IMG/VR virus record: IMGVR_UViG_3300023184_000025
Span: 124,001 to 188,000 of that record
Strand: one strand, 5' to 3'
Length of the DNA: 64,000 bases
Shown: positions 19,227-46,750 of the stretch, piece by piece
Layout: every line of letters starts with the position of its first letter
Position numbering within the stretch: position 1 is the stretch's first letter
The notes under the pieces: model-generated
Told to the model about the DNA's origin: nothing
The model's database searches: none
What the model saw: only the letters and a program-made list of their open reading frames with translations
Made by a program: the position numbers and the translations under genes

Positions 19227-19235
19227 TGTTTCCTC

Positions 19236-20449: not shown

Positions 20450-20451
20450 AG

Positions 20452-20709: not shown

Positions 20710-20714
20710 TTGTA

Positions 20715-21773
20715 TTATTCTCCCTGATCAGATTCTTCAGTACTTACCGTTTCTGTTTGATTGACAAAGTCTTTCATCACAATATCCAGGCAATCGTCGT
20801 CGTTGCGTTCCCAACCCTTACGGAACTTTTTAATAATTTCTCCAGCACTGGTAGTGAATACTAGGCTGTTGCCTTCTTTCTTGAGTAGGCCTTTCTTCTC
20901 AATCAAATCAGTGAGACCCGAATACGGACTCATTCCAGATTCGTAAGGAATTTTAACCTGCACACCTTCGAAAGGTTTAGCATAGCGTGTTTTCATTACC
21001 TTGCATGCGGCACGAATACCCATGACGTCGGTAATTTTGTTGCCATCTTCATCTTCTTTAAGTTTGAGTTTCTTCATTGCAACAACAATTGAGCTTGCAT
21101 AAACAAAACCTTGTCCACCGCTGATCTTGTCATCTGGATCAAACATGTCTTGACTGGCATATGTGTGATTGGTACATACCAAGCCTACATTGTAACTTCC
21201 AAACATGTTGACACAATTACGAACAAGTGATGTAAGTGCTTTGGGTTTACGTCCCATGTCACCTTTCATATCGCCAGCATCAAACTGATTTACATCAGTT
21301 GGTGTAAGCAACATGCCCAATGAATCAATGACAAATAACACTTTGGGACGTTCGCCATCTGGTAATGATTTGTAATCACTCATGAATGTGGAAATAGTTT
21401 TTGCCACATCATCAATCATGGCCATTGCTAGTTTGAGTAGTTTGCTTTCGCTAGTGTCAACACCAAGATCATGCAACCATTTTTCATCTAGTGCATTTTC
21501 AGAGTCAATCAGCACTACAAAGATACCTTGTTCTTGTGCGTTCTTGATAATGTTGCCGGAACAGATGTAGCTTTTGCCAGCGCCAGACTCTCCGGCAAAC
21601 ACCGTAACCTTGCCCAATGGCACACCTCGGTTAAAGTCTCCGCTGATCAAATAGTTCAGTGCATAGTTGCCTGTGCTGATCCAATCTGTGGGATCGTTAA
21701 AGCCAATGCTTAGGCCTTCGATGCTTTTTGTAATTTCCTTACGGAACTTGCTTACGTCAAACGGTTTTCCCAT
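20715..21773 (-). CDS. uvsX: UvsX/RecA-like recombinase
   Basis: ISTGNYALN, Walker A GESGAGKS, IDSENA, FVIDSLG, TNH, SGG. Confidence 0.93.
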   Translation of the reverse strand: MGKPFDVSKFRKEITKSIEGLSIGFNDPTDWISTGNYALNYLISGDFNRGVPLGKVTVFAGESGAGKSYICSGNIIKNAQEQGIFVVLIDSENALDEKWLHDLGVDTSESKLLKLAMAMIDDVAKTISTFMSDYKSLPDGERPKVLFVIDSLGMLLTPTDVNQFDAGDMKGDMGRKPKALTSLVRNCVNMFGSYNVGLVCTNHTYASQDMFDPDDKISGGQGFVYASSIVVAMKKLKLKEDEDGNKITDVMGIRAACKVMKTRYAKPFEGVQVKIPYESGMSPYSGLTDLIEKKGLLKKEGNSLVFTTSAGEIIKKFRKGWERNDDDCLDIVMKDFVNQTETVSTEESDQGE

Positions 21774-21800
21774 AAATGTTTTCCTAAAAATGTAAAGTTA

Positions 21801-21829
21801 ATTATACTAAAAATTAAGTCAAATGTCAA
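21801..21829 (-). promoter_or_regulatory. Consensus sigma70 promoter TTGACA-N17-TATAAT for uvsX
   Basis: -35 at 21829-21824, -10 at 21806-21801; AGGA SD downstream. Confidence 0.85.
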
Positions 21830-22649
21830 TGTGTAATTGTATGTATTTTTGCCAAAACGCAGAAACTATGTCAGAGTTAAAATCATCGTAGCCCATTTTT
21901 AAATACAATTCTTTCATTGCATTAACATAGTTTTCTTTGACAAAAATATTATTATCAATGTCAAATGATAAAATTTTATTTGTATGCAGTGGATAATATT
22001 CTGTTATTTCTTCTCGAATGTTATCGGGCAAATTTGAAAATTTTTTTATATCAAATCCTGAATATTCAAAATCTTTCCAACTTGGCCAATTTTCAGTGGC
22101 AAGAATCAAATATTTTTCTTTTGATTCATTGTATCCATACCCTAACGTACGATCTCCGGTGGTTTGTTTTAATGCTGATCCAATACTCCAAAATTTTTCA
22201 AAATTTACTAAATTGATAATTCTAGCATTTGGCCAGGCTGTTAATACTTTTGTTCTAGGGTTCAGCTGATAAGGATGGAATGTCAAAAATAAATCAAGTC
22301 CGCTGTTCAATTGTTCCCATATAAAATCACCAGTGATTGACCGTTGCCCTCTAATAATCCAATCTTCTATATCTTGTCTACAAAATAAATCACTATTTTT
22401 CCATTCGTAACCATCCTGGGGATAGCTAGGCACCCACTTTGTCATTTCACTCTTGTTTGGAGGCAATGTTGTGAGTACTGCATTTAATCTGTACTCGTAG
22501 TCATTGGGATATTTTAATAAATGTTTATTAAATTTAGGATTCTTAACCAGCGTGTGTCGGCTCAGCGTTAAAGAATTGCAAATAAAATTCCCGCCGGTGA
22601 ATGCAGGATATCTTAAAATTACAAAATTATGTGGTTCAAAGTCAGTCAT
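21819..22649 (-). CDS. Hypothetical protein with sulfotransferase/P-loop-like N-terminal motif
   Basis: ILRYPAFTGGNFICNSL; AT-rich; ATGA-coupled. Confidence 0.65.
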   Translation of the reverse strand: MTDFEPHNFVILRYPAFTGGNFICNSLTLSRHTLVKNPKFNKHLLKYPNDYEYRLNAVLTTLPPNKSEMTKWVPSYPQDGYEWKNSDLFCRQDIEDWIIRGQRSITGDFIWEQLNSGLDLFLTFHPYQLNPRTKVLTAWPNARIINLVNFEKFWSIGSALKQTTGDRTLGYGYNESKEKYLILATENWPSWKDFEYSGFDIKKFSNLPDNIREEITEYYPLHTNKILSFDIDNNIFVKENYVNAMKELYLKMGYDDFNSDIVSAFWQKYIQLHIDI

Positions 22650-23596
22650 TGAGATACTTTTAAATAATTTTTACTAAAGTAATGATTGTAATTATACTCA
22701 ATGGTATCTTGCTCTAATAGATATAAATCTTGCCAATCATCTGTTGATAGTAAACTAAATTTTGATATCATTGATACTAATTCTAGTAATCTAATAACTG
22801 GATTTTGAATTGTGTCGAATCGATAATCAAACAATTTAGTGTATTTTTTGAATCCATAGTATTTTTCCACATAGTCATGCCAACCGGGTTGTGCATATGC
22901 TAGGAACAATCCTCTGGTTACTACGCTGTATAAAAATTTTTCTGTTACAAATGGATAATAACTTGTGGCCAACGTTTCGCTTACTATGTGTAAAAAACTC
23001 TGTGTTAACTTATTTTCAAGATTATATATGTTGTCTGCATGTGCAAATCTAACATGTCCAAAGCTGTGTATAGTTTCTTGAAAATTATTACTGTTTACAA
23101 AAAATTTACCACTAACACGAGCTTGACCAGGAGTTAGATAATCTAATAGATGTCCATCGACATTATTAGATGTAAATTGAAAATTCTTACTGCAATATTC
23201 AGGAACAAAAAATTTAAACTTATCTAGTATTGAAACTAGTAGTGTTCTACCAACTTGCAACGATCCATTAAAACTACAAACAAAATTTTTATAATCCAGT
23301 TCTGGATGCATATTGTAATTATAAAAATGACCAGTGTTGATTCTTTCCTGCTCTTGTATCAAAAATGTAATTTTAAGATTTGGATATTTTGCTGTTATGT
23401 TGTTGGTGAAAATCTGATGAACTGTGATGTCAAAAATCTTATTCCGTTGAATAGCAAAATCATTTAATCTTTTTAGGATTTTATTTTGCAAATCAATATC
23501 AAATCCGCCTATGTGGTCGTTGAATAGAAATTTATCAGGTACCCAACTTGGGTCTTCTAATATCTTATCATAAACAACAGGGGGCAATGATATCAT
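22646..23596 (-). CDS. Putative glycosyltransferase, GT-B/GT10-like C-terminal region
   Basis: FLHIVSET...FVTEKF...GFK segment recalls the YVTEK motif of GT10-type enzymes; assignment tentative. Confidence 0.5.
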   Translation of the reverse strand: MISLPPVVYDKILEDPSWVPDKFLFNDHIGGFDIDLQNKILKRLNDFAIQRNKIFDITVHQIFTNNITAKYPNLKITFLIQEQERINTGHFYNYNMHPELDYKNFVCSFNGSLQVGRTLLVSILDKFKFFVPEYCSKNFQFTSNNVDGHLLDYLTPGQARVSGKFFVNSNNFQETIHSFGHVRFAHADNIYNLENKLTQSFLHIVSETLATSYYPFVTEKFLYSVVTRGLFLAYAQPGWHDYVEKYYGFKKYTKLFDYRFDTIQNPVIRLLELVSMISKFSLLSTDDWQDLYLLEQDTIEYNYNHYFSKNYLKVSQ

Positions 23597-24318
23597 ATAT
23601 TTTTGTATTCATCAAAGGTACTTACATAATGTTCAACATTATTTTTTAACAACATAGCCGATTTATATGGAGGATAGTACATTGCTTTGATAAATTGTTT
23701 AATTTGATTGTCAGACCAGCCATCCTGTATAATTCCGTTGAATGGTTTTTCTTTGTTAAAATAACGTCCAAGTTTTTTTGGAGGCGTTCCCAAATCTCCT
23801 GTTAACACATGTTTGATTGATTCAATTGCATGGTTTAGTATTTTAAAATTTAAACTAAATGCTGTGTCTTGTTCGTCAATTAAAAACTTCTGTTGAAGTA
23901 TAATATTGCCAGCATCAAATTGACTGTTAACATAGTGCCAGGTATAGCCGGTAAATTTTTCATTGTTGATTAATGCCCAACTTGACATCCATCGTCCTCG
24001 ATATTCTTCAAGCAACCCTGTATGTAAATTTATAATACCGTTTGGAAATTTTTTAATATTATCTTCAGATATTAAAAAAGGAATACCACTGATATTTAAC
24101 ATCAACTCTGCAGATTGTGTAACATACTTATTAAAGTCGTTGTTATTGGAAATTGATGTGTGCTGTATTAACAATTGGTCACAAAATTTTGTTAACAGCA
24201 ACTGATTAGGAGGATGATAGACCTGAATTTCTCCAGGTCTATACCCAAGCTCAAATAATTTACTAACTAAGGGGATACACGATGTATCAGTACAACCAAT
24301 TGATAGATTGCCCCTCAT
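23593..24318 (-). CDS. N10-formyl-THF-dependent formyltransferase (probably sugar N-formyltransferase)
   Basis: IINLHTGLLEEYRG, WAL, TGYTWH, DAGNII. Confidence 0.85.
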   Translation of the reverse strand: MRGNLSIGCTDTSCIPLVSKLFELGYRPGEIQVYHPPNQLLLTKFCDQLLIQHTSISNNNDFNKYVTQSAELMLNISGIPFLISEDNIKKFPNGIINLHTGLLEEYRGRWMSSWALINNEKFTGYTWHYVNSQFDAGNIILQQKFLIDEQDTAFSLNFKILNHAIESIKHVLTGDLGTPPKKLGRYFNKEKPFNGIIQDGWSDNQIKQFIKAMYYPPYKSAMLLKNNVEHYVSTFDEYKNI

Positions 24319-25461: not shown

Positions 25462-27924
25462 TTATGATTTCATCATGCCAGACAGCTGACGCAATCGGCT
25501 TAGAACATCTTGTTCCACATCATCAAACTTTTGTAGTTTACCAGAGTGTCCGTATTGGCCTTGCAGTGATGTTGATTCTTCAAATGTTTTCTTAAATCCT
25601 TGAACAAAGTCACTTGGATTTGGTGTACCGGCGCCAACCATTTTACCAAGAGCGCCCATATTGGTGTCATCGGCACCTTCGCTCATTACTTGATCAATAA
25701 GTTTTTTGCCACCGTATAGTACAGCCAATAACAAACCCAATGGTATTGCATACTTGGCAGCGGCAATTGCCAGCTCACCAATAGTTTTACTATCAATTGC
25801 GTTGCCAACAATACTGGTTAATGCTCCTGCGGCATCCTTTGCATCTGTGTAAACTTTGTTCATTCCTTGTGGGATTGACTTAGCAATTTCATCTGCTATG
25901 GAATATACACCAGCACCAAGACCAACCTTGCCTGCATTTTGAGCTGTTGATTGTGCGGCTGATTTACCAACTTCTACAGCACCTTTACCAATTCCTGTGG
26001 CTGCCTTTCCGGCCACTTCGGCGCCAGCTTTGCCTGTTTTGGTTGCCATGCGTCCCAATGCAGGTCCAACACGAGATAATATTGGCAATAACATTCTTGC
26101 TCCAGCAGCCAATGCAGGAATAATAGGAGCAATCTCATTAAGCTGTGCTTCGGATAGTTTATTTTCTTTGCTTAGTTCTCTACCGGCCATTTGTCCAGCA
26201 GTTCCGCCAGCGGCCCCACCAATCACACCGCCAATTGCGGCACCAACTGGTCCACCTGCTAATGCACCCAATGCTGATCCAGCAACTGTTCCGCCAACAC
26301 CACCGGCTGTTCCGCCAGCAAGTTCGCCTTTCCAACCTTCGTTCAATCCTGACAACTGGCGCATACGTTCAACGCTTTCACTGCTCATGTTGCTGGACTT
26401 GGTCATCATTACGCCATCGGTGTCAAGGTCCTCGCCAAGATCTGATTCATGCAAACTGTCGTAGGCCAACTCATGTACAAGGTCGCCGTGCTCGTCGTTT
26501 AGTTGGTCCAATTCTTGATCACTTAGATCTGTTCCGTCAGTAAATGAAGCACGGCCAATATATGCATCACTGAAGTCTGGATAGTCTCTAGAATCAACGT
26601 TTTCAATTTCTAAGCTACGCATGTCAACTTCTTTACCATTGAGCATGATACCTTGTCTGGCACCTTCTGTCATGCCTTGCTCACCAGAGTCAGGCCCTAC
26701 AGTAGAATTAATATCGATACCAAGCTCACCTAGACGATTGATAACTTCAGGATCTTCCCAGCAGTCAGCATTGGGATCGCGGTCAGCTAGGTCATTCAAC
26801 CGATCAAACAAGATGTCATCGCCCACTAGGTCATACAATTGTTCTGTTGCATTGGTTGCATCAGCACCCACAATCAATGGCTTACTCATTAATTCTTTAA
26901 GTTTTGCGTCTGATTCAGGCGTGTCAGGTAATGCCCAGGTGCCCTCCATGACATGGTCGGCCCATGATTCAAATTGATCTACTTCTTTCATTTTATCTTC
27001 CTTATTGGCTAATTTTGCCAGAATTGGTAACGCTTCTTCTATGCGCTGGTCTATTGATTGTTCAACAAACAGGTCACGTATGGATTCTACTGCATGATCT
27101 TTTTCGCTAATTTCAGCAGGGTCAAACGTGTCACGTGTTTCCAAATATCCACGACGGCTGATCATGTGTTTGGCTTTGTTCTTGAGTTCAGTATAATGTC
27201 TTACTGCCGACTCGACCATACCAATGGCATCATTGTTTAGGTTTTTGTGTCGTGCGGCACGAATAAATCTACCTAAAGTGTTTAGTTCTACTACCATCTC
27301 GTTGATGTGCTGTCCAAGTGCATCGTAAGGATGGCCGCCTTCGGAACAATGTCTAGCCATGACCTTGCCACACATGAGATTTTTGTGTGGTAACTTATAT
27401 CGACTGCCGTCTGCTGTTTCCACAAACAAACTTTCAATGGCCCGGAATCGTGCTTCGCCTTCTGCAATGTCACGATTGTGCTTGATCATTAATCGTGCTT
27501 CCATGGGCTGGTCACTGTAGCTTATGTTCTTTTTACCATAGTAGCCTTCAAACAAACCTTCTTTGATGGCTGCCATACCTTGCATGGTGTACTTTAATCT
27601 ACTTAGATTGTTCAACTCAAAACTTAATAAATTTCTAGTTGCAAAATTTTTAAGCTGTTCTAGGAACTTGTACCAATCTGATTTATCATCACCTTCCATG
27701 GTACGGCCAACATTGTCCCCAAAGAACACCTGTAGTGTATTGTTAGGGCCTAGCAAAACAACCACAGTTCCGTAGTTTTTATTTTCTGTTTTCCAATCAA
27801 AGCTAAAGATCTCTGTTTGATTAGGGTCAGAAACAGGCTTGCCTGAATTATCCAGTAATTCAGGATCAAGGTCGCGTGTGACTAGTAAGTCGTTGAGTTC
27901 GGTTGCTGGCGTGTTCTGATTCAT
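25462..27924 (-). CDS. Putative prohead-core/internal head polyprotein (820 aa) with glycine zipper
   Basis: TAAATA 6 nt before ATG; many hydrophobic-x-E sites (IKEG, LFEG, VMEG, MTEG, LHES, LNEG, LSEA, MSEG, FEES); RxRQLSG motif twice; next to terminase. Confidence 0.7.
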   Translation of the reverse strand: MNQNTPATELNDLLVTRDLDPELLDNSGKPVSDPNQTEIFSFDWKTENKNYGTVVVLLGPNNTLQVFFGDNVGRTMEGDDKSDWYKFLEQLKNFATRNLLSFELNNLSRLKYTMQGMAAIKEGLFEGYYGKKNISYSDQPMEARLMIKHNRDIAEGEARFRAIESLFVETADGSRYKLPHKNLMCGKVMARHCSEGGHPYDALGQHINEMVVELNTLGRFIRAARHKNLNNDAIGMVESAVRHYTELKNKAKHMISRRGYLETRDTFDPAEISEKDHAVESIRDLFVEQSIDQRIEEALPILAKLANKEDKMKEVDQFESWADHVMEGTWALPDTPESDAKLKELMSKPLIVGADATNATEQLYDLVGDDILFDRLNDLADRDPNADCWEDPEVINRLGELGIDINSTVGPDSGEQGMTEGARQGIMLNGKEVDMRSLEIENVDSRDYPDFSDAYIGRASFTDGTDLSDQELDQLNDEHGDLVHELAYDSLHESDLGEDLDTDGVMMTKSSNMSSESVERMRQLSGLNEGWKGELAGGTAGGVGGTVAGSALGALAGGPVGAAIGGVIGGAAGGTAGQMAGRELSKENKLSEAQLNEIAPIIPALAAGARMLLPILSRVGPALGRMATKTGKAGAEVAGKAATGIGKGAVEVGKSAAQSTAQNAGKVGLGAGVYSIADEIAKSIPQGMNKVYTDAKDAAGALTSIVGNAIDSKTIGELAIAAAKYAIPLGLLLAVLYGGKKLIDQVMSEGADDTNMGALGKMVGAGTPNPSDFVQGFKKTFEESTSLQGQYGHSGKLQKFDDVEQDVLSRLRQLSGMMKS

Positions 27925-27936
27925 ATCTTATATTTA

Positions 27937-29505
27937 TTACATCATTGTCATAACAAACGGCAGTGGTTCAATTACCACATCCTGGTGATCGCGCATTTGT
28001 TCGTCAAGATTCTGGTGATAACTCTGCAATAACTGCATCATTCTAACTACCAGTAAAGTTGACATTACCAGATCGTCTGTTTCTCCCATTTTTGCCGCAT
28101 AGCTTGCGCCTGACGCAACAAAGTTTTTAAGTTCACTGATCAGGCTTTTGCTGTTGATTTTCATACGCTTTGACTCAACCAGGTGTTTTAACTTGGCGCA
28201 AGCAGATAGCTTTGACTTGTTGGTTGTGTTAAATCCTTTACGGAATCTACGACTAACACTAACTCCGGGTTCGCTGAGGAAATAGCCTTGTATGTTTTCT
28301 TCTCCGTATTCAGCAATAGAAATTAGTGCGGCTTCCCCAATGGTGTTATTTTCCACTGAAAAATAGATACTTTTTGGGTCACGCACAGTTTCATTGATGT
28401 GTCGTATAATGTCGGCTAGTATTCTAACTTGGCCAGGAATGTCAGTTTTATTATGTCTCCATTCTCCAACTTGTAGTGTGGAGTTTGCATCAAATATCTG
28501 AATTGCTGCCGGGTCGCCGCCGGTGCCCAGACTAGGGTCAAGTGCAACAACATAAATTTTTTCAGGATCTATTCGACAATACCATCGTACTTCACCAGTT
28601 TTATAAGCTGGGTCTACACCTTCTAGATCAATCAATGTTGTTGGAGCAATCAGCGTTTCATCATTGATGATGAATTCGCAATCCATTTCACGTCGGAAAC
28701 GATCAGTGCCCAGGGCCGCACGTTGTTGTGTTGCCCAAGATTCATCACGGTCCGGATGCTCATTCCAAAAGCTACGATAGGCTTTGAAGCCATTGACACC
28801 AATTTCAGTAGGATTACCAAATTCATCTTCACAACGATTGGCGCCTTTCCATAACAGAGCAAACTGGTCTTCGTCACTGTTGGGAGTTGATGTAATAATT
28901 GCTTTACCACCAGTGGCTAGTGTGGGACTGATAGAAGTCCAAAATTCTGTGGCAATTGTAGGTCGGACAAATGCAAACTCGTCTGCGTACAGTAATGATA
29001 TACTCATACCACGACCGGTGTTTTCTGTGGTTGTTGCTGACACAATACGCGAGCCGTTGTCAAATTCTAAACTACCTTTGTTGTAACTTGTGACGCCAGC
29101 ACGAATATGATCAGGTACCGATTCATAGGCGTATCGTACCCGTTGCATGATCTCTTGTGCTCCTGTGTATTTGTGTGCGGCAACTAGTATAGTACTGTCA
29201 GGAATAAACATAGCATACCAAAGTAGATATCCGGCAGCTGATGTTGACTTACCTGTTTGTCGAGGCATCATTGAAATTGAATATCTATAATTATGGTAGG
29301 TATGAATTAGTCTACGTTGATATTCAAACGGATGATACAACATTCGACCACGAGTTGGGTGCTGTATATAGAAAAAATGGTCCATAAAATAAAGTGGACC
29401 ACTAGCAGGATCGGCACAGGCAATAAACTCATCAAGCTGTTGCTCGGTATAGTTAATACGTAAATGGGGTGGCTTAATTAAAACGCCTTCTAAAGACTTA
29501 CTCAT
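27937..29505 (-). CDS. gp17: Terminase large subunit
   Basis: PRQTGKST, GRGMS, Walker B ADEFAF, TSTPN, nuclease LDPSLG and DDLVM. Confidence 0.95.
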   Translation of the reverse strand: MSKSLEGVLIKPPHLRINYTEQQLDEFIACADPASGPLYFMDHFFYIQHPTRGRMLYHPFEYQRRLIHTYHNYRYSISMMPRQTGKSTSAAGYLLWYAMFIPDSTILVAAHKYTGAQEIMQRVRYAYESVPDHIRAGVTSYNKGSLEFDNGSRIVSATTTENTGRGMSISLLYADEFAFVRPTIATEFWTSISPTLATGGKAIITSTPNSDEDQFALLWKGANRCEDEFGNPTEIGVNGFKAYRSFWNEHPDRDESWATQQRAALGTDRFRREMDCEFIINDETLIAPTTLIDLEGVDPAYKTGEVRWYCRIDPEKIYVVALDPSLGTGGDPAAIQIFDANSTLQVGEWRHNKTDIPGQVRILADIIRHINETVRDPKSIYFSVENNTIGEAALISIAEYGEENIQGYFLSEPGVSVSRRFRKGFNTTNKSKLSACAKLKHLVESKRMKINSKSLISELKNFVASGASYAAKMGETDDLVMSTLLVVRMMQLLQSYHQNLDEQMRDHQDVVIEPLPFVMTMM

Positions 29506-29547
29506 ATCAATATATATGGTAAAACGGCAGTTAAGCCAGAGTTTTAA

Positions 29548-30360
29548 TTAATCAGCTTTGCCACACTTGGCACGTTTAGCGTTGGTCAATGTGCCAAAAT
29601 CTACAGCCCATTCGGTGTCAGGTGTAATTTCTTTTGCATTAGCAGGAAATTTAAACTGTACACCTGCTTGACTTTGAATAGTAGAAATCATTGCACGGAA
29701 TTGAGTTAGATCGTTACCCAGGTTAACATAAGGTTTTGTATGTGGGAATGCCCAGCCAGCTATTTCATGAGTGACATTGTTGATTACAATTTTATAGTAA
29801 GCATGTGGCACAATAACACCGTTACCAATTGTTTCATCGCCGGCGCCATATAACGCACCCACATAGATTGTGTATGCTTGATTGCGTTGTACTACCCATC
29901 CACGTACTGATGTTTCTAACAGTTTCCAAATTCCACGATTAAGTGACCCGTGTTGTGGATACATGTTGGTCATTAGGAATGATTCGTACTCAACTTGCTC
30001 GCTCCAGGATAAATCACCGTCGGGCGCGGCATGGCCTTTGTCGTAGCCTGTGCCAGCATAGTCATCTGGCTTGGCACCATTTGGTACTGAACGATCAGCA
30101 ACAAATGCATTTGTTCTTGGCCAGCATCCTAATGCATTAGGTGGTGTTAGGGTATAGGCAACATAAACAGGAATCTTGACTGGTGCATCATACGCAACGA
30201 AGTACGCTTCGCGACATATAGGTTGTGCTGGTCGCTTTGTTTTTGCAAAGCCGTATGGGCTGTGTATTTGACATGCTTGTGGGGGTAATGGAGCACGTTG
30301 TTCCCATGCTTGAGCTAGACTTGATGCCGCTAGCAATACGGCAAATAACAGTTTTTTCAT
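29548..30360 (-). CDS. DNA/RNA non-specific endonuclease (Serratia NucA family) with Sec signal peptide
   Basis: MKKLLFAVLLAASSLAQA signal; YDKGH, TNMYPQ, LNRGIWKLLE. Confidence 0.9.
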   Translation of the reverse strand: MKKLLFAVLLAASSLAQAWEQRAPLPPQACQIHSPYGFAKTKRPAQPICREAYFVAYDAPVKIPVYVAYTLTPPNALGCWPRTNAFVADRSVPNGAKPDDYAGTGYDKGHAAPDGDLSWSEQVEYESFLMTNMYPQHGSLNRGIWKLLETSVRGWVVQRNQAYTIYVGALYGAGDETIGNGVIVPHAYYKIVINNVTHEIAGWAFPHTKPYVNLGNDLTQFRAMISTIQSQAGVQFKFPANAKEITPDTEWAVDFGTLTNAKRAKCGKAD

Positions 30361-30381
30361 CTGGTATTTAGTTACCCAGAT

Positions 30382-30771
30382 TTAGCGTGGGTAACCTTTG
30401 AATGCGTTAATTGGACTTTTGTTATCAATAAATGGAGGTTCTTTGCTAGGACCAGTTGACACCATCTTTTTGCCGCCAGGAGTGTTGGTCATTTTAAGAG
30501 CAGAGTCAATTATCTGCGCAACGCTATTGTTCATTCCGACTACAATGCCGTGCTCACCAAATGTTGTTTCATCATGCCACTCGGGCATGTTAGGATTAAC
30601 CTCATCCTTAACAGCGTCACTTCTTGCACGAGCAATTGCTACACCAAATCTATAATTTTTATACGGGTCTGCGGCACTGAGGCCGGGAATCACATAGGTG
30701 TAGCGCATAGGGTCAGCTTGCTCAGCCGGCAACTGGGCGGATTGTTCAGTGATAAACTCGCGGGCTCTCAT
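30382..30771 (-). CDS. Putative internal head protein with capsid-targeting-like N-terminus
   Basis: MRAREFITEQ; ends SPINAFKGYPR; paralog of the adjacent gene. Confidence 0.7.
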   Translation of the reverse strand: MRAREFITEQSAQLPAEQADPMRYTYVIPGLSAADPYKNYRFGVAIARARSDAVKDEVNPNMPEWHDETTFGEHGIVVGMNNSVAQIIDSALKMTNTPGGKKMVSTGPSKEPPFIDNKSPINAFKGYPR

Positions 30772-31142
30772 CTTGGGTAGCCTTTGAATCCAGTAACAGG
30801 ACTGACTTTGTGTGTGTCGTTGGGTTCTTTACTAGAATGATCACGAATTAACTCATGTGCATCGGTTCCTGAAACTGTGTTAAATGCCTGTCTCATCATA
30901 TTATGTTCTGTTTCGGTATACGGATATGCCATATTATTCTTTCCAGCAAAACTTTCATCTTCCATGTCCAATGCTTTAGTACTTTTACCATCGGCCATAG
31001 CAGTTGCCTTCATTACCTGATTCAAGTGATATATTCTATCTGTACCATCATCCTTGAATTTATATGCGCCGCGAGAAACAGAGGCATGATCTTTATGCAT
31101 CTTGCCTTTTTTAGATTCAACAATAAATTCGTGTGCTCTCAT
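30768..31142 (-). CDS. Putative internal head protein with capsid-targeting-like N-terminus (start revised to 31142)
   Basis: MRAHEFIVES; TAATG-coupled; ends SPVTGFKGYPR. Confidence 0.7.
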   Translation of the reverse strand: MRAHEFIVESKKGKMHKDHASVSRGAYKFKDDGTDRIYHLNQVMKATAMADGKSTKALDMEDESFAGKNNMAYPYTETEHNMMRQAFNTVSGTDAHELIRDHSSKEPNDTHKVSPVTGFKGYPR

Positions 31143-31420
31143 TATGGTTGCCAAACGCCAACTTGCCCTGAGCTTGCAGTACCAACTTCTTGTATAGTAG
31201 CGTTAGATCCAGTGATTGTGAGTTGATTGCCAACTCCTACCCAAACAGTCACACGATTGTTTGCGGGAATCACAACAGGATTTGAATATAAATTACCAGT
31301 AGACGGACCGTATACTAAATTTACATTGTAGGTAACAGTATTTGTACCTGTGGATATTCTGGCTTTATCTGTGTACCATGTCTGGCTACTAGCAGATGTA
31401 TAAACGTTGGCTTGACTCAT
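31142..31420 (-). CDS. Small beta-rich virion-like hypothetical protein
   Basis: SD upstream; T/N/V/G-rich; coupled to the next gene. Confidence 0.7.
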   Translation of the reverse strand: MSQANVYTSASSQTWYTDKARISTGTNTVTYNVNLVYGPSTGNLYSNPVVIPANNRVTVWVGVGNQLTITGSNATIQEVGTASSGQVGVWQP

Positions 31421-31436
31421 GTTCTTATTTTCCTTT

Positions 31437-32498
31437 TTACCATGCTCGGCAAGACCAATAGCGAGCCGATGTCTTTGGACCAGGGTTCTCGCAATGATGT
31501 CTTGCTCTAAAACTCTTACGACGTGCAGGATTTGATTTCTTGATCTTCATTGTCTTTTGGCCAGCACGTTTTGCACTTGTTCCGCCATGTCCAAAGTTTA
31601 CTTTTTTAATGTTGCCAGTGCTGGGATCTTTAACATAGACTTTAAACTTTTTGACATCACCACGCATGGGTTTGCTCAGCGGCACATTACGTCCGTGATA
31701 CTCAGCTTCGGACATTTCAACTTCATCAGACTCGTCTTGATTACTTTCAATATAGTCAGCGGCTGTGTCAACATAGTCAGCGGCTTTGGTAATTTTTGAT
31801 TGCACCCACTCTGGCATGTTTTCGTTGTCGTCCAGCATGCCTGTTAAACGTCGGGCGGCACGAACAATAGTTTCAAGATCATCCTTGGCCATGTCACCTT
31901 CTTGGTCATATTCTCCGCTGTCTACAACATCAATGTTAGATTCTTTTACTTGATCTGAAGAATTGTCTAGTGTACGAATAACATCTCGTACCCAACCACT
32001 AACATCGCTGGATCCAATTTCTTCTACATCCCCTACCCACTCGGCAACATCTTTTACCGCATCCATTACTGCCTGCGGACCATGACGGCTCAGTAATCCT
32101 GGGTGTTGCATTAAAATACGATGTAGGATTGCACGTTCGGCTGGGGCTGGTTCATCGTCTAAACTTTCGTGTACACCTGGCATTGGGTTAGTAACATCTG
32201 TTTCCAATTCTTTTGCCGTTAACACACCAGCTGATTGATCTTCGCCAATGCTGTATCCCATGCCAGAACTGTTTCCTACTGCACCATAACGACGAATTTC
32301 TTCAGAAGTAAATCCGTGAGATTCTAATAGTTCAATTGCACGAGCATCGGCATGAAGGATAATATCGTTTCCAACCACGTCAACAATGTGTGTTTCTACC
32401 AGGCATTGTTCTCCGTAGTCAAAGGCAAATGTATCGCCAACAGCAGGAGTGGCGGACCACTCTTCGGCTTCAGTTAGATAATCTTTTAATGTTTTCAT
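31437..32498 (-). CDS. Modular internal head protein (353 aa) with basic C-terminal module
   Basis: MKTLKDYLTEA N-terminus; IGED, VHES, VKES and MSEA junctions; modules EGDMAK..LPEWVQSKITKA and RRKSFRARHHC..ARYWSCRAW. Confidence 0.72.
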   Translation of the reverse strand: MKTLKDYLTEAEEWSATPAVGDTFAFDYGEQCLVETHIVDVVGNDIILHADARAIELLESHGFTSEEIRRYGAVGNSSGMGYSIGEDQSAGVLTAKELETDVTNPMPGVHESLDDEPAPAERAILHRILMQHPGLLSRHGPQAVMDAVKDVAEWVGDVEEIGSSDVSGWVRDVIRTLDNSSDQVKESNIDVVDSGEYDQEGDMAKDDLETIVRAARRLTGMLDDNENMPEWVQSKITKAADYVDTAADYIESNQDESDEVEMSEAEYHGRNVPLSKPMRGDVKKFKVYVKDPSTGNIKKVNFGHGGTSAKRAGQKTMKIKKSNPARRKSFRARHHCENPGPKTSARYWSCRAW

Positions 32499-34681
32499 TT
32501 TCTAGAATAACGTTGATATAATTCCCACAGCCGGGCTTCCTGGCTTTCAGCCATTGGTCCAACTGATCCACGAGCTGGATCACGATTAAGAACCGGAGTA
32601 GTGGTTTGTCCTGTTGTCTTTGGTCCGTTTAAACCACCGCTGAGTGTTTTAGTCATTGTGTCAATGCCAGCATACTCTGTGTTGTCTGCGCTGTTAGCCA
32701 ACTCTTCGTCCACTTGTTCGCAACCACATTCTCTAGAACCGCAGGATGGGCAAACTTCCGAGTAACCTTCACTGCTACCGCCCATACCGGCCAACTTTAG
32801 AATCTGTGCTAGTTTTCCTGCATCTTCATCTGTGGCAGACACGTTAAGACTATTATGTCCTTCTGAATCAACAGTGGCATTGATATTCATGCTTTCGTTT
32901 AACACTTCAGTCATTCTAGCGTTGAAACTTTCAGCTAGTTTTGCTTCGTATACACCTTTACCGTACTGCATTCCGCTTTTGCTTGGAGTGCTGTCAGACG
33001 TTTCTTCAACTTCTTTTTTCTTGGCTTTCTTTTCAGGCAAGCCTTTGTGCTTGGTGGCAGCAAAGTCTTCAGCATCTTTCTTTTTCATAGTTTTGGCCAC
33101 TTTGCCAACTTCTTTGCTGGCTGGCTTCCCGCCTTTTTGTGCGGCATGAACCATGCCCATGAACTTTTGTTGCTTCTTGCTTGTTGCTTTTTCGTCAAGT
33201 TCTTTTTCATTGACCTGCGCATTACCTGGCTGATTGTTTTTAATCATGGTCATTGCGGCCCATAGTGAGCTTTCAAGACGACTAGCAAAGCCTGGTGGCA
33301 TTTGTCCTCCGCCCTGAGCTTTTTTGGCAATTGCACGTAGTTCAGCAAGTTCATTATAAATTTCTTGAGCCTGTCCTGAGTCAGAGCCTTCTTTGGTCAT
33401 TAACTTTGAAGTACCGCTTGGTCCTTTGGCACCAATACTCTTGCCTGTGCCTTTTGGACGACCTTTGCCGCGCTTGTCTCCTGCGGCTGGTGTATCATCT
33501 GTGCCCACGCTGTGGCCAGTATTGGGATCAACACGGCGTGTTACTTTTCGACCAGTTGCTGTGTGTTCAATATCATGCAATGCACCACGCTCGATAGAAC
33601 CAACTTTGGGTTTCTCTGGACGTGGCTTCTTCCATGATGTAAATGGATTGTTGTCATCTTCGTCAACTTCTCCTGGTGCACCTTTGATACCAGCGGCTTT
33701 GAGTGCGGCTGCTCTGTCTGGGTAGCCTTTAGTTCCGGGCTTGATGTCTTTGGATGCTTTTCCAATTGCGGCTTTTACCTTTGGCGAGGCATTGCTGGCA
33801 TTAACATGCTTCATTGTTGTTTTGGCCTGGTGACTTTTTGCACCCATTTTACCAATGGCACTTTTCATTGCTTCAGCAGCAACATCGCCCAACATTTCAT
33901 CAACTTCTTGTTTTGCGCCAGCAATTTTGTCAGCAAAAGTAATTTTGTCTTTGGGTTCGGCTAGTGCGGCAAATGATTTTTGCTTGGCAGTCATTGGAGA
34001 ACTACCTTCACCAAATTGCACATTGTCCCCTGCTGAGAATTGTGTGTTGGCCAAACGCTTTGGTAATCGACCTTTAGCAATGATAAAATCTAATTCCTGG
34101 TCTGTTGGGCCTGCTTGTTCTAGATCGTGAGCCAGGTCCTGCATTGCATCGTTGTCCCATATATCGTCGCCATACAATGCGGCAATTGAATCTAGTACTT
34201 TGTCAAAGTTAACTGCGCCTACAGCTTCACCAACGGGCTTTTTGCCTGTCTGTGGCAAGCCTGCTTTGCGTTGTAGGTCACGAATCATGTCTTCGTCGCT
34301 GCCATGGCCCAATGTGTCGAGGGCCTTCTGACCAACTTTCTTAACACCACTGCCAATTTTTTTAACTACATCGCCCATGTCTTCATCAAATGCATCGCCT
34401 ACTTTATCTCCGGCAATTGCGCCACCTACTGCTCCGAGTGGTCCCAGAGCCAGTGCACCTAGTCCAGCACCGATACCAGTTCCAATTATGCCTTCATCAA
34501 CTTCTTTAGCTTTACCGCCTTTGGCATCTTTGCCCAGTCGTCCAGCAATGACATCGCCACGTGTGACCTTGTCATAGGGCTTGGCATTGTTGGCCAAGTT
34601 GCCGTCGCCTTTGCCTTCTTTTAGTGTTTGTTTATCAGCCAGGTCACTCAGCTTTTTGTTTAAGTCGTAAAAAAATGTCAT
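32495..34681 (-). CDS. Putative prohead-core/internal head polyprotein (728 aa)
   Basis: Repeated LKEG, VDEG, VGEA, FGEG, VDEM, VDED, TKEG, LDEK, VEET, LAES, LNES, MAES; glycine zipper; AT-hook-like KGRPKG. Confidence 0.7.
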   Translation of the reverse strand: MTFFYDLNKKLSDLADKQTLKEGKGDGNLANNAKPYDKVTRGDVIAGRLGKDAKGGKAKEVDEGIIGTGIGAGLGALALGPLGAVGGAIAGDKVGDAFDEDMGDVVKKIGSGVKKVGQKALDTLGHGSDEDMIRDLQRKAGLPQTGKKPVGEAVGAVNFDKVLDSIAALYGDDIWDNDAMQDLAHDLEQAGPTDQELDFIIAKGRLPKRLANTQFSAGDNVQFGEGSSPMTAKQKSFAALAEPKDKITFADKIAGAKQEVDEMLGDVAAEAMKSAIGKMGAKSHQAKTTMKHVNASNASPKVKAAIGKASKDIKPGTKGYPDRAAALKAAGIKGAPGEVDEDDNNPFTSWKKPRPEKPKVGSIERGALHDIEHTATGRKVTRRVDPNTGHSVGTDDTPAAGDKRGKGRPKGTGKSIGAKGPSGTSKLMTKEGSDSGQAQEIYNELAELRAIAKKAQGGGQMPPGFASRLESSLWAAMTMIKNNQPGNAQVNEKELDEKATSKKQQKFMGMVHAAQKGGKPASKEVGKVAKTMKKKDAEDFAATKHKGLPEKKAKKKEVEETSDSTPSKSGMQYGKGVYEAKLAESFNARMTEVLNESMNINATVDSEGHNSLNVSATDEDAGKLAQILKLAGMGGSSEGYSEVCPSCGSRECGCEQVDEELANSADNTEYAGIDTMTKTLSGGLNGPKTTGQTTTPVLNRDPARGSVGPMAESQEARLWELYQRYSRK

Positions 34682-34691
34682 GTTGTTTTCC

Positions 34692-35291
34692 TTATTTCAT
34701 AAAGCCGGTTGCAGGCTTGGGTGGTCTTTTAATTGTTGTCAATGGGCTTTTGACTCCCATTGGCAGTTGATTTGTTGTCTGTGCAGGTGCAGTTTTGCCA
34801 CCAGCCACAGTCCATTTAGCATCAGCGGCAGAATTTTTAACAACTTCGTGCTCACTGGGTTCAGCGGCATAGTCAGCTTTTAATTTCTTTTGTTCAGCAT
34901 CTGTGGGTGGCAAATCTGTGGTTAGCAGATCCTTTTGATTTTCAATGCCCAATAACTCTTTGTCCATGCCTTCGGCCCAGTCACGTTGATCCATCACAAT
35001 GCTGTTTGCATCAAGACCCAGCAGTTCAGCAATCTGAACCACCTGTGGTGGTGTAGCCGGATATTTAAAACTAACATCAATGATGTTTACAGACTGATTA
35101 GCATGGTCTGGGAACCCAACTGGTTTAGATAAAATTGGGGTTTTCTTTGGCTCAGAGATTTTGATTGGGTCGAATTTTTTTAACTTTTCGTTAAAAGCTT
35201 TCATAAAACCACCTGGCAAATCACCAATGATTTTAATACGGTAATCAAAGGTTTGAGCACTTTCAATCAAGTATTGTGCAAATGTTTTCAT
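34692..35291 (-). CDS. Putative head protein with capsid-targeting-like N-terminus
   Basis: MKTFAQYLIES; TAAATA and AGGA SD upstream. Confidence 0.7.
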   Translation of the reverse strand: MKTFAQYLIESAQTFDYRIKIIGDLPGGFMKAFNEKLKKFDPIKISEPKKTPILSKPVGFPDHANQSVNIIDVSFKYPATPPQVVQIAELLGLDANSIVMDQRDWAEGMDKELLGIENQKDLLTTDLPPTDAEQKKLKADYAAEPSEHEVVKNSAADAKWTVAGGKTAPAQTTNQLPMGVKSPLTTIKRPPKPATGFMK

Positions 35292-35312
35292 ATTTAGGAT
35301 CCTATATTATAT

Positions 35313-35798
35313 TTATCGATCAGACGTCTTTGTGTTGGTTCGATCAACTAGTCTACTGAGTAATTCATTACGGTCAATAACAGCACCTTGACCAGTTGGC
35401 ATGTTGTTATTGTTAACATCATCTTTATCTAGTTTTGCTTTCTTTAACTGTAGATCAATCATCTTTAGCTTTTTATTCATCTTGGCAGTTTTTGCTGTGA
35501 TAGCATGGCCTAGCATCTGGCTGGCAACACTGAAAATTTCGCTAGCAAAACGGCTGTCTACTTGCATGCCCAGGTCCATAAGATTGTCAAATTCTTTAGT
35601 GGCCTTGGCAGCCAGTTCGTCCATTTCCTGATCACTGGCTTCTAGCCCTCGAACCGCAGGTAATGCTGCCTCAATCTTATCTAAGGCATCTAGGGTTTCT
35701 GGTAGTACTGGGAAAGTGGGCTGTGACTCAGGTGTCACAACAGTATCTTCAGAGTCTGAAGATGGAAGATCAAATAAAGATTCAAGTTTACGAGTCAT
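35313..35798 (-). CDS. gp16: Probable terminase small subunit (gp16-like)
   Basis: Size, helical hairpin plus coiled coil and GAVIDRNELL tail resemble gp16; TAAATA 4 nt before ATG. Confidence 0.55.
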   Translation of the reverse strand: MTRKLESLFDLPSSDSEDTVVTPESQPTFPVLPETLDALDKIEAALPAVRGLEASDQEMDELAAKATKEFDNLMDLGMQVDSRFASEIFSVASQMLGHAITAKTAKMNKKLKMIDLQLKKAKLDKDDVNNNNMPTGQGAVIDRNELLSRLVDRTNTKTSDR

Positions 35799-42891: not shown

Positions 42892-42904
42892 TAAAAAATC
42901 CTTG

Positions 42905-43603: not shown

Positions 43604-43634
43604 ACTAATAGTTATTGTTGTAATATGCTGGGCA

Positions 43635-46725: not shown

Positions 46726-46750
46726 TTTTAGTTGTCTACGGGCAATTCCA

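What the first reader, a model, noticed from the sequence alone, without database searches (positions are those of the whole stretch)
25462..34681. Capsid-internal polyproteins: beads of small modules separated by prohead-protease sites
Seen: the 820-, 728- and 353-aa ORFs consist of short, unrelated modules joined by recurring hydrophobic-x-Glu-(G/A/S/D) sites, about ten or more in each long protein. Modules include glycine zippers (about 26180-26330 and 34400-34495), an AT-hook-like KGRPKG (about 33450), an acidic DYPDFSDAYI module, a basic RRKSFRARHHC..YWSC module and (R/K)-x-x-x-L-(S/A)-G-(L/M) motifs. Known: T4 gp21 cleaves after Glu in (L/I)-x-E contexts during head maturation. Inference: one gene delivers many peptides (membrane-active, DNA-binding, anti-defence) that are released in the head and ejected with the DNA, a cassette-like effector delivery system.
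Basis: partly seen in the sequence, partly recalled or inferred. Interest (0 to 1): 0.8.

Follow-up and report, generated by a model that had tools for sequence, protein, structure and literature searches.

The report
Capsid-targeted modular internal proteins, jumbo phage
An uncultured jumbo phage has, between its two DNA-packaging genes, a cluster of genes with T4-style "send me into the capsid" leader peptides, and three of its proteins are strings of small swappable modules joined by likely capsid-protease cut sites, which suggests that many small unexplained aquatic-virus proteins travel inside the capsid.

Summary
ORF820, ORF728 and ORF353 are strings of small modules, and hydrophobic-x-Glu sites occur about twice as often as in shuffled sequence. 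Only about half of the sites are conserved.

- **Capsid targeting:** neighbours and ORF353 start with leaders matching the T4 capsid-targeting sequence (T4 MKTYQEFIAE|A; here MKTFAQYLIE|S, MKTLKDYLTE|A, MRAREFITE|Q). More than 40 relatives conserve them.
- **Virion link:** ORF199 and the ORF820 N-domain have homologs in phage PA5oct recorded as virion proteins by mass spectrometry.
- **Shuffling:** modules move as cassettes among the three carriers in over 100 metagenomic relatives. They also occur as stand-alone small proteins.
- **Border sites:** for two modules the predicted cut lies exactly where leaderless stand-alone homologs place their start Met. These are DUF3008 and the basic RRKSFRARH..YWSC module.
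- **Structure:** AlphaFold shows short folded elements separated by disordered linkers, which hold most of the conserved Glu sites.

Not shown: cleavage itself, ejection, and any effector function. The phage's own protease gene lies outside the window and I could not retrieve it.

Verdict: a T4-type internal-protein locus expanded into multi-module carriers. It is a new variant of a known kind.

The parts
34692..35291 (-). ORF199: conserved internal-protein-like gene. Its leader MKTFAQYLIE|S (nt 35262-35291) matches the T4 capsid-targeting sequence.
   Evidence: T4 IPIII and IPII begin MKTYQEFIAE|A. 41 distinct relatives keep MKxFxxYLxE|S. Homologous to Paride_0514, the counterpart by position and length of PA5oct EST35_0202 (E 8e-9), which GenBank lists as 'structural protein, ESI-MS/MS'.
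32495..34681 (-). ORF728: multi-module carrier. Leader aa 1-22 (MTFFYDLNKKL...LKE|G). Modules include a Gly/Ala-rich hydrophobic stretch (aa 63-93), a helical module (aa 159-211), a conserved block (aa 229-275), a beta module plus AT-hook-like RGRP core (aa 345-411), a helical hairpin (aa 436-482), DUF3008 (aa 498-552, nt 33026-33190), a Cys-containing module (aa 597-659) and a C-terminal helix.
   Evidence: Blocky conservation. Nearly invariant Glu at 100, 152, 431, 497, 560, 596 and 669. AF2 model has pLDDT 56 and pTM 0.29, with folded islands and linkers. DUF3008 and PHROG hits. Cassette indels.
31437..32498 (-). ORF353: accessory multi-module carrier. Capsid-targeting leader MKTLKDYLTE|A (nt 32469-32498), acidic modules, and a C-terminal basic module at aa 265-353 (nt 31440-31706) preceded by MSE|A.
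   Evidence: Leader conserved in its family. Present in only part of the relatives. Its modules occur inside ORF728- and ORF820-type proteins elsewhere. Border in register with stand-alone homologs.
31142..31420 (-). ORF92: small conserved gene of the locus with no capsid-targeting leader. Role unknown.
   Evidence: Homologs in 70 related loci at the same position.
30768..31142 (-). ORF128 (likely start ATG at 31142, 124 aa): small internal-protein-like gene with leader MRAHEFIVE|S and C-terminus FKGYPR.
   Evidence: The ATG overlaps the ORF92 stop codon (TAATG). The family begins MRAxEF(I/V/L)xE. There are 2-3 such genes per related locus.
30382..30771 (-). ORF129: paralogous small internal-protein-like gene with leader MRAREFITE|Q and C-terminus FKGYPR.
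   Evidence: 42 variants keep MRAREF(I/V/L)xE. The EFIxE core is identical to T4 QEFIAE.
25462..27924 (-). ORF820: conserved virion-protein N-domain (aa 1-405, nt 26710-27924) plus a hypervariable cassette tail (aa 406-820, nt 25465-26709). The tail holds an acidic module, the conserved DLDTDGVMMTKSSNMSSES element, Gly/Ala-rich and hydrophobic modules, and a repeated C-terminal RLRQLSGM tag.
   Evidence: N-domain homologous to PA5oct EST35_0206 / Paride_0003, a structural protein by MS. More than 3100 homologs whose tails make total lengths 451-865 aa. Low-confidence loops carry the ~invariant IKE|GLFE|G and VME|G. The linker QG[MV][AT]EG flanks cassettes.
35313..35798 (-). TerS-like gene, upstream boundary of the locus.
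   Evidence: phrog_445 terminase small subunit, E 2.6e-4. Conserved position.
27937..29505 (-). Terminase large subunit. It sits between the small internal-protein-like genes and ORF820.
   Evidence: Terminase_6N and Terminase_6C. 53% identical to PA5oct TerL.

Best explanation
This is a T4-type internal-protein locus of an uncultured jumbo myophage distantly related to Pseudomonas phage PA5oct. It lies between the TerS-like gene and TerL, with ORF820 just beyond TerL.

Proposed mechanism:
1. Short N-terminal capsid-targeting leaders direct ORF199, ORF353, ORF128 and ORF129 into the assembling prohead core. ORF728 probably uses a longer leader.
2. A T4 gp21-family (Peptidase_S77) prohead protease removes the leaders after the Glu of an (L/I/V/M)-x-E site.
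3. ORF728, ORF353 and the tail of ORF820 are carriers. Each has several small autonomous modules fused through disordered linkers that carry the same kind of site.
4. Maturation would therefore cut them into fragments of about 20-170 residues, alternately basic, acidic and hydrophobic. These would stay with the DNA and leave with it at infection.

Modules are exchanged as cassettes between carriers and phages.

Shown: the anatomy, the leaders, module shuffling, the position and conservation of the sites, and virion detection of two homologs in PA5oct.

Inferred: targeting, cleavage, retention, ejection and what the fragments do.
For: **Leaders**
- T4 IPIII/IPII begin MKTYQEFIAE|A.
- The T4 literature places targeting mainly at residues 4 and 7, and processing at residues 8 and 10 (PMC9026906).
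- ORF199 and ORF353 have F/L at 4, Y at 7, L at 8 and E at 10. ORF128 and ORF129 have EFIxE.
- These are conserved in 40+ variants per family.
- Of 567 Met-initiated ORF candidates in the window, 6 fit a loose leader pattern. Only ORF199 and ORF353 show the MKT..Y-L-x-E form.

**Virion link**
- In PA5oct's GenBank record the syntenic genes EST35_0202, 0203, 0205 and 0206 are 'structural protein, ESI-MS/MS'.
- Homology to window proteins was shown for 0202 and 0206 via their Paride counterparts.

**Modularity**
- Stand-alone or differently fused homologs exist.
- ORF353 modules sit inside ORF728- and ORF820-type proteins of other phages.
- The AF2 model shows beads on a string.

**Sites**
- Nearly invariant Glu residues lie in otherwise variable linkers. 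9 of 12 conserved sites fall in pLDDT<50 segments, which make up 45% of the protein.
- Cassette-indel borders lie within 5 aa of [LIVM]xE in 41/38% (left/right) vs 24% of random positions, and in 43/71% vs 30% in a second data set. Controls with D, K or Q at P1 sit near random.
- In ORF820-family tails, [LIVM]xEG occurs 95 times vs 31 expected, and [LIVM][AT]EG 60 vs 3.6.

**Exact register**
- Basic module: T4-like myoviruses have h-x-E|(A/S/G)-E-(Y/F)-x-G-(K/R). Non-T4-like viruses start M-A-x-Y-(K/R)-G.
- DUF3008: forms with a leader read ...LDE|KAVSK. Leaderless forms start MPAKSK.

**Protease specificity in the clade**
- MCP N-termini read ..L-x-E|G-L.
- The clade's protease is Peptidase_S77.
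- [SAG]xE, the phiKZ-type motif, is not enriched.

**Independent hint**
- In roseophage CRP-6 the basic module is fused to a prohead protease domain, Peptidase_S78_2.
Against: - No experimental data exist for this phage. Cleavage, packaging and ejection are all inferred.
- The phage's own protease and MCP genes are outside the window. Four collection scans did not retrieve them.
- The motif excess is only about two-fold. Apart from one border set (71%), under half of cassette borders lie near a site.
- Some conserved sites lie inside predicted helices (E262, E270), and some conserved Glu lack a hydrophobic P3 (E431, E669).
- The homologs analysed are related to each other, so the statistics are not independent.
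- ORF820 has no recognisable N-terminal capsid-targeting leader.
- In Paride, the ORF199 homolog lacks Glu at position 10.
- ORF728 has only a weak, local similarity (E 0.078) to its positional counterpart in Paride/PA5oct.
- In T4, multiply cleaved proteins are core proteins whose fragments mostly leave the head.
Confidence: 0.55

Rival explanations
1. The proteins are packaged in the head and lose at most their N-terminal leader. Otherwise they remain intact multi-domain internal or ejection proteins. The conserved linker Glu residues serve another purpose, such as solubility, charge balance with DNA, or linker flexibility.
For: - Most motif occurrences are not conserved.
- Apart from one border set, under half of cassette borders lie near a site.
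- In SPN3US and phiKZ many head proteins lose only a propeptide.
- E-rich disordered linkers are common.
Against: - The two module borders in exact register with stand-alone homologs.
- The stereotyped QG[MV][AT]EG linker.
- The specificity of the excess for Glu over Asp, Lys or Gln at P1.
- The match of P3 and P1' preferences to the clade's MCP N-terminal L-x-E|G.
Confidence: 0.2
2. They are prohead core or scaffold-like assembly proteins, functional analogues of T4 gp22/gp67/gp68. They would be chopped at many sites so the pieces can leave the head and make room for DNA. They would then be neither cargo nor effectors.
For: - T4 core proteins are cleaved into multiple fragments that mostly exit the head (PMC9026906).
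- The proteins are rich in charged helices and disorder.
- The locus is conserved next to the packaging genes.
Against: - Module content is hypervariable. ORF353 is dispensable in many relatives.
- The same modules exist as autonomous proteins in podoviruses and an archaeal spindle virus with different capsid assembly.
- In Paride a separate candidate scaffold gene sits between protease and MCP.
- Several predicted fragments are as large as or larger than T4 IPI*, which is retained.
Confidence: 0.15
3. They are not virion components but ordinary cytoplasmic multi-domain phage proteins. The leader resemblance and the motif excess would then be coincidental.
For: - No Pfam or NCBIfam structural annotation.
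- No T4 late-promoter excess: 3 matches vs 4.3 expected.
Against: - The leaders are conserved across more than 40 variants in four gene families of one locus.
- Two homologs were detected in PA5oct virions by MS.
- The locus sits between packaging and tail genes.
Confidence: 0.05

Closest known systems
Phage T4 internal proteins IPI, IPII, IPIII and Alt with the capsid-targeting sequence, processed by prohead protease gp21
   Same: - A roughly 10-residue N-terminal leader with the same key positions, ending in (L/I)-x-E|(A/S).
- Diverse cargo behind a conserved leader.
- Small basic proteins among the cargo.
- Several paralogous genes clustered together.
   Different: - The phage is a distant jumbo relative (TerL 53% identical to PA5oct).
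- The locus lies between TerS and TerL.
- Three carriers hold many modules in series, with internal candidate sites, instead of one cargo per leader.
- None of the cargo is homologous to T4 internal proteins.
Extensively processed head, inner-body and ejection proteins of giant phages phiKZ, 201phi2-1 and SPN3US
   Same: - Jumbo-phage head proteins cut at several Glu-ending sites by a gp21-related protease.
- Long propeptides, with several fragments per gene.
   Different: - Those proteases use (S/A/G)-x-E, which is not enriched here. The sites here are T4-like (L/I/V/M)-x-E, often followed by Gly.
- No sequence homology.
- Cassette shuffling of small autonomous modules has not been described there, as far as the papers read here show.
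Polyvalent proteins of phages and conjugative elements (Iyer et al. 2017, PMC5512222)
   Same: - Many unrelated domains in one polypeptide encoded beside virion genes.
- Extensive mosaicism.
- Proposed delivery with the DNA and proteolytic release of the parts.
   Different: - Polyvalent proteins are built from large, mostly enzymatic domains and often carry their own peptidase.
- The modules here are 20-170 residues with no recognisable enzymes or LPD domains.
- Release would depend on the external prohead protease.
T4 prohead core proteins gp22, gp67 and gp68
   Same: Multiple (L/I)-x-E sites in one protein. Small leader-bearing genes exist in the clade's head module.
   Different: - Core proteins are conserved assembly factors encoded between portal and MCP, and their fragments are largely expelled.
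- These carriers are hypervariable, partly dispensable, and made of modules that also live as independent genes in other viruses.

Membership tests
T4-type internal proteins with a capsid-targeting sequence | N-terminal leader of about 10-19 residues resembling MKTYQEFIAE: hydrophobic or aromatic at positions 4 and 7 (targeting), L/I at 8 and Glu at 10 (processing) | tested here: met
   ORF199 MKTFAQYLIE|S, ORF353 MKTLKDYLTE|A, ORF129 MRAREFITE|Q, ORF128 MRAHEFIVE|S, compared with T4 and the rules in PMC9026906. Conserved in families. ORF728 has a longer, different leader ending L-(K/N)-E. ORF820 has none.
T4-type internal proteins with a capsid-targeting sequence | The genome encodes a gp21-family (Peptidase_S77) prohead protease with (L/I)-x-E specificity | tested here: inconclusive
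   Not in the window. Own contig region not retrieved. Present next to the MCP in Paride/PA5oct and hundreds of related contigs. MCP N-termini there read L-x-E|G.
T4-type internal proteins with a capsid-targeting sequence | Diverse cargo behind a conserved leader | tested here: met
   ORF353-family proteins range from 155 to 502 aa, and MTFFYDLN-type carriers from 307 to 1412 aa, behind conserved leaders.
T4-type internal proteins with a capsid-targeting sequence | The protein is physically inside the head, its leader is removed, and it is ejected with the DNA | not testable with these tools
   The only indirect evidence is that PA5oct homologs of ORF199 and the ORF820 N-domain are annotated as virion proteins by ESI-MS/MS.
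Polyvalent proteins (Iyer et al. 2017) | Hallmark domains: LPD families, MPTase or other in-built peptidase, ART, helicase, methylase and similar | tested here: not met
   No Pfam hit other than a sub-threshold DUF3008. No LPD match in 32 N-domain homologs even at E<=1. The only hints are one BFVD fold hit that carries an LPD name and a weak Atlas hit.
Polyvalent proteins (Iyer et al. 2017) | Two to fifteen unrelated domains in one polypeptide, mosaic between relatives, encoded beside virion genes | tested here: met
phiKZ/SPN3US-type processed head proteins | Cleavage motif (S/A/G)-x-E | tested here: not met
   [SAG]xE is not enriched: z -0.4, -1.4 and -0.6 in the three ORFs, and 376 vs 384 expected in the tails.
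T4 prohead core/scaffold proteins (gp22/67/68) | Conserved assembly gene located between the portal and MCP genes | tested here: not met
   The locus lies between TerS and TerL/SSB. Portal, protease and MCP are absent from the window. In Paride, separate genes occupy the portal-MCP interval.
DUF3008 (PF11450) | Match to the Pfam model above the gathering score | tested here: inconclusive
   ORF728 aa 499-552 scores 20.3 bits against a cut-off of 24. However, there are strong PHROG matches (E 4e-21), and stand-alone homologs 61-85% identical mostly carry PF11450.

The most novel reading that the evidence does not exclude
T4-like aquatic phages, from jumbo freshwater-type phages to cyanophages and pelagimyophages, may share a plug-in system. 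Any small phage gene could become capsid-delivered cargo by acquiring a short leader or by being spliced into a carrier protein. The splice would go through a stereotyped linker, such as QG[MV][AT]EG or L-x-E|, that serves both as the recombination joint and as the prohead-protease site. Widespread dark-matter families, such as DUF3008 and the RRKSFRARH..YWSC proteins, would then be pre-made proteins injected with the DNA. The same proteins would be made after infection in phages that lack a gp21-type protease.
Probability: 0.3. Interest if true: 0.75.

Novelty: new variant of a known kind. Interest (0 to 1): 0.6.

Why it matters
- **Reach of a classic mechanism.** If correct, the T4 capsid-targeting and gp21 mechanism extends to a very abundant, uncultured clade of jumbo phages. 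The ORF820 N-domain alone has more than 3100 homologs in metagenomes.
- **Context for unexplained proteins.** Several small viral protein families with no known role would gain a concrete cellular setting: inside the capsid, delivered with the DNA.
- **Testable predictions.** The model predicts exact cleavage positions that mass spectrometry can check in cultured relatives such as PA5oct and Paride.
- **Possible tools.** It suggests natural leaders and linkers for loading foreign proteins into large capsids.
- **Caveat for annotation.** Long 'hypothetical' phage proteins may be precursors of many peptides.

Tried and rejected
- **Near-identical DNA in GenBank phages:** none.
- **Pfam and NCBIfam on the three ORFs and their neighbours:** essentially blank apart from terminase, the nuclease and a sub-threshold DUF3008.
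- **Head genes in the window:** portal, protease, scaffold and MCP are absent.
- **Head module of the window's own contig (IMGVR_UViG_3300023184_000025):** four attempts failed. I used the Paride MCP, the Paride protease, a degenerate MCP DNA pattern and a protease alignment. The collection holds more than 600 related loci, and either only the best 80 are kept or the pattern did not match.
- **ORF820 N-domain:** Foldseek against the PDB gave nothing below E 0.02. PDB sequence-profile searches with A3 and A2 gave nothing meaningful.
- **Polyvalent-protein lead:** the LPD lead from BFVD and the Atlas was not confirmed by Pfam.
- **Expression signals:** the T4 late-promoter motif TATAAATA occurs 3 times vs 4.3 expected and never in the locus. 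Sigma-70-like promoters and intrinsic terminators are at shuffle level.
- **DNA-level repeats at junctions:** only short two-copy matches of 22 nt at 82-86% identity. That is too weak to support linker-mediated recombination.
- **phiKZ-type (S/A/G)-x-E specificity:** rejected.
- **Supplementary MS tables of the PA5oct paper:** not held. The MIJ3 paper has no cleavage data.
Full report
**Setting**

The window is part of an uncultured jumbo myophage. Its ORF820 and ORF728 are 100% identical to genes on IMG/VR contigs of 345 kb and 47 kb. No GenBank phage is close at the DNA level. The large terminase is 53% identical to that of Pseudomonas phage PA5oct/Paride and 41-52% identical to other T4-core jumbo phages.

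All genes of interest are on the minus strand. The order is: tail sheath, two tube proteins, two small genes, a TerS-like gene, ORF199, ORF728, ORF353, ORF92, ORF128, ORF129, a secreted-type nuclease, TerL, ORF820, then a gp32-like SSB. Dozens of related contigs keep this order. In them ORF353 and the nuclease are optional.

**Checking the observation**

Against 500 shuffles, hydrophobic-x-E-[GASD] occurs as follows:

| ORF | Observed | Expected | z |
|---|---|---|---|
| ORF820 | 15 | 7.7 | 2.8 |
| ORF728 | 11 | 5.7 | 2.5 |
| ORF353 | 6 | 3.3 | 1.6 |

- [LIVM]-x-E occurs 18 vs 8.5 times in ORF728 (z 3.8).
- The phiKZ-type [SAG]-x-E is not enriched.
- The excess is real but modest, so the decisive question is conservation and position rather than count.

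**The locus carries T4-style capsid-targeting leaders**

This is the strongest new point.

- I translated T4 ipIII and ipII from the T4 record. Both begin MKTYQEFIAE|A.
- The T4 literature states that the first 10 residues suffice for head incorporation. Targeting depends mainly on residues 4 and 7. Processing depends on residues 8 and 10. gp21 cuts after Glu in L/I-x-E (PMC9026906).
- In the window, ORF199 begins MKTFAQYLIE|S and ORF353 begins MKTLKDYLTE|A.
- ORF129 begins MRAREFITE|Q. ORF128 begins MRAHEFIVE|S. Its real start is the ATG overlapping the ORF92 stop codon.
- Across relatives these leaders are the best conserved parts of the proteins. I found 41, 11, 42 and 47 distinct variants, all keeping the pattern.
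- ORF728-type proteins share a longer leader, MTFFYDLNKKL...QLNE|RD.
- Each related locus has two or three MRAxEF genes, one or two MKxFxxYLxE genes and one MTFFYDLN carrier.
- Of 567 Met-initiated ORF candidates in the window, six fit a loose leader pattern. Only ORF199 and ORF353 show the MKT..Y-L-x-E form.

**Link to real virions**

In PA5oct's GenBank record the syntenic genes around TerL (EST35_0202, 0203, 0205, 0206) are 'structural protein, ESI-MS/MS'. ORF199 is homologous to the 0202 counterpart in Paride (E 8e-9). The ORF820 N-domain is homologous to 0206 (E 1e-16 to 5e-22). ORF728 has only a weak local match to its positional counterpart, E 0.078.

**Modularity and shuffling**

*ORF820*
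- It consists of a conserved 405-residue domain followed by a hypervariable tail. Homologs with 60-98% identical N-domains range from 451 to 865 aa among the listed hits. More than 3100 homologs were found.
- Nearly all tails contain EDLDTDGVMMT(K/R)PSNMSSES followed by a short C-terminal amphipathic helix of the xLxRLxxLAxx type.
- In ORF820, extra cassettes follow that element and a second copy of the tag ends the protein.

*ORF353*
- Its modules at aa 114-177 and aa 184-260 sit inside ORF820-type and ORF728-type proteins in other phages.

*Other phages*
- T4-like cyanophages and pelagimyophage HTVC008M have similar multi-module proteins built from the same families. These often have L-x-E leaders of their own.

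*Structure*
- AlphaFold2 with a 43-sequence alignment gives ORF728 a pTM of 0.29.
- The model has folded islands: helices 2-20, 129-139, 159-211 and 257-311; a beta unit at 363-382; a confident hairpin at 436-482; the DUF3008 helices at 502-538; an alpha/beta unit at 579-630; and a helix at 715-726.
- Low-confidence linkers separate them.

**Are the Glu sites at the borders?**

*Conservation*
- In the ORF728 family, Glu100, 152, 431, 497, 560, 596 and 669 are nearly invariant although they lie in variable linkers.
- Sites at 225, 262, 659 and 712 are 82-95% conserved.
- Nine of twelve conserved sites fall in pLDDT<50 segments, which make up 45% of the protein.

*ORF820 N-domain*
- Its two low-confidence loops are exactly the near-invariant AAIKE|GLFE|G and the invariant VME|G.

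*Cassette insertions and deletions between relatives*
- These are typically flanked by ..VKE|..MDE|..FGE|..LNE|..MSE|.
- In ORF820 tails they are flanked by a stereotyped linker QG[MV][AT]E|G on both sides.
- In the tails, [LIVM]xEG occurs 95 times vs 31 expected, and [LIVM][AT]EG 60 vs 3.6.

*Border statistics*

| Data set | Left border within 5 aa of [LIVM]xE | Right border | Random positions |
|---|---|---|---|
| IMG/VR polyprotein set | 41% | 38% | 24% |
| ORF820-family tails | 43% | 71% | 30% |

- Controls with Asp, Lys or Gln at P1 are close to random.
- The sequences are related, so these figures are descriptive, not probabilities. Many borders have no site.

**Exact-register evidence**

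*The basic C-terminal module of ORF353*
- T4-like myoviruses carry a site directly before the module:

| Phage or protein | Sequence at the border |
|---|---|
| ORF353 | MSE\|AEYHGR |
| C48C1 | LTE\|AEYQGK (the protein also starts MKKFKQYIDE\|G) |
| HTVC008M | LEE\|AEFQGK |
| Melnitz | MME\|SEYQGK |
| Flavobacterium phage immuto | LDE\|GEYRGK |

- In three viruses the protein stands alone with no leader: roseophage CRP-901, pelagiphage podovirus HTVC026P and a Nitrosopumilaceae spindle-shaped virus. It starts M-A-x-Y-(K/R)-G, so the start Met sits where the P1 Glu is.
- In roseophage CRP-6 the same module is fused to a prohead protease domain, Peptidase_S78_2, E 7e-18.

*DUF3008*
- Stand-alone homologs come in two forms.
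- Leaderless forms start MPAKSK(K/A)QQKF.
- Forms with a short T4-like leader read, for example, MKISELIRLDE|KAVSKAQQ, MRIQEIIQLDE|KAVSK and MQLNE|KAKS.
- ORF728 reads ELDE|KATSKKQQ. Again Met aligns with the P1 Glu.

**Protease**

The window lacks portal, protease and MCP. Four scans failed to recover that part of the same contig.

In Paride and many related contigs, a Peptidase_S77 (gp21-family) protease lies beside the MCP. MCP N-termini there read ..(A/G/V)-L-x-E|G-L. Small neighbouring genes start MKINDIITE|G and similar. This fits the P3-hydrophobic, P1-Glu, P1'-Gly/Ala/Ser preference seen in the carriers.

**Interpretation**

The best reading is a T4-type internal-protein locus. Leaders target proteins to the prohead core. 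A gp21-type protease removes the leaders. It probably also cuts the carriers at linker sites into fragments of about 20-170 residues, with alternating charge and some hydrophobic Gly/Ala-rich pieces.

My estimates for each step:
- Capsid location and leader removal: likely, about 0.8.
- Multi-site internal cleavage: plausible, about 0.55.
- Retention, ejection and effector roles: open.

The invariant RGRP core and the strongly basic modules suggest DNA binding, as with the basic T4 internal proteins. This is inference only. Nothing here tests anti-defence or membrane activity.

**Rivals**

- Packaged but internally uncut proteins.
- Scaffold-like proteins cut up in order to be expelled, as T4 core proteins are.
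- Non-virion proteins.

The first two remain possible. The third is unlikely, given the leaders and the PA5oct data.

**Comparison with known systems**

- The leader and protease logic is that of T4 (PMC9026906, PMC3012670).
- Multi-site processing of giant-phage head proteins is known for phiKZ and SPN3US, but with a different motif (PMC5694885).
- Mosaic multi-domain proteins delivered with DNA are the 'polyvalent proteins' of Iyer et al. (PMC5512222). Their hallmark domains are absent here.

The new elements are:
- The serial small-module carriers.
- The cassette exchange among three carriers and with stand-alone genes of many aquatic viruses.
- The stereotyped protease-site linkers.
- The placement between TerS and TerL in a very abundant uncultured clade.

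Noticed in passing
window 27937-35798: The TerS-like gene and TerL are separated by about 5.8 kb of internal-protein-like genes. The arrangement is conserved in the nine long related loci listed, and Paride shows a shorter version.
   Followed up: partly
window 29548-30360 (-): A DNA/RNA non-specific endonuclease (PF01223, E 4e-37) sits between the internal-protein-like genes and TerL. Its N-terminus looks like a Sec signal peptide (MKKLLFAVLLAASSLAQA) rather than a capsid-targeting leader. It is present in only 15 of the related loci, so it is an optional insertion. The signal peptide was judged by eye and not tested.
   Followed up: partly
L388:838-1524 (Roseobacter phage CRP-6 gp55): The basic RRxxFRxRHxC..YWSC module is fused to a prohead serine protease domain (Peptidase_S78_2, E 7e-18). 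This is an independent sign that the module family rides inside capsids.
   Followed up: partly
window 25465-26709, and proteins P0001-P0120: Nearly all ORF820-family tails contain the element EDLDTDGVMMT(K/R)PSNMSSES followed by a short amphipathic C-terminal helix (xLxRLxxLAxx). Its function is unknown. It may be a C-terminal anchoring or targeting tag.
   Followed up: partly
window 45265-46782 (-): A B12-binding radical SAM protein lies among the structural genes. Its best NCBIfam matches are P-methyltransferase and RiPP C-methyltransferase subfamilies, all far below their cut-offs.
   Followed up: no
window 22001-24000, and ORFs at 18249-24318: GC drops to 0.32 at 22-24 kb, against about 0.40-0.45 elsewhere. 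The ORFs there were not scanned against any family library. From their N-terminal sequences they may be sugar- or nucleotide-modifying enzymes.
   Followed up: no
window 56204-61234 (-): A 1676-aa ORF with only 1% Glu, flanked by ORFs with fiber or decoration-like PHROG hits. It is probably a tail fiber or other large surface protein.
   Followed up: no
window 42244-44156 (-): A dNMP kinase-like gene and an Rv2179c-like 3'-5' exoribonuclease domain gene (E 1.6e-35) lie next to the sheath gene.
   Followed up: no
L109:1562-3118 and L111:40735-42240 (Paride_0002, Paride_0515): Paride's positional counterparts also show the xLxxLAG(I/V) motif followed by x-x-E. Examples are MFNINDILRLAGVQAVKE and LDEISKLAGISNVEE. 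The tag-plus-site arrangement may therefore extend to cultured PA5oct-like phages.
   Followed up: partly
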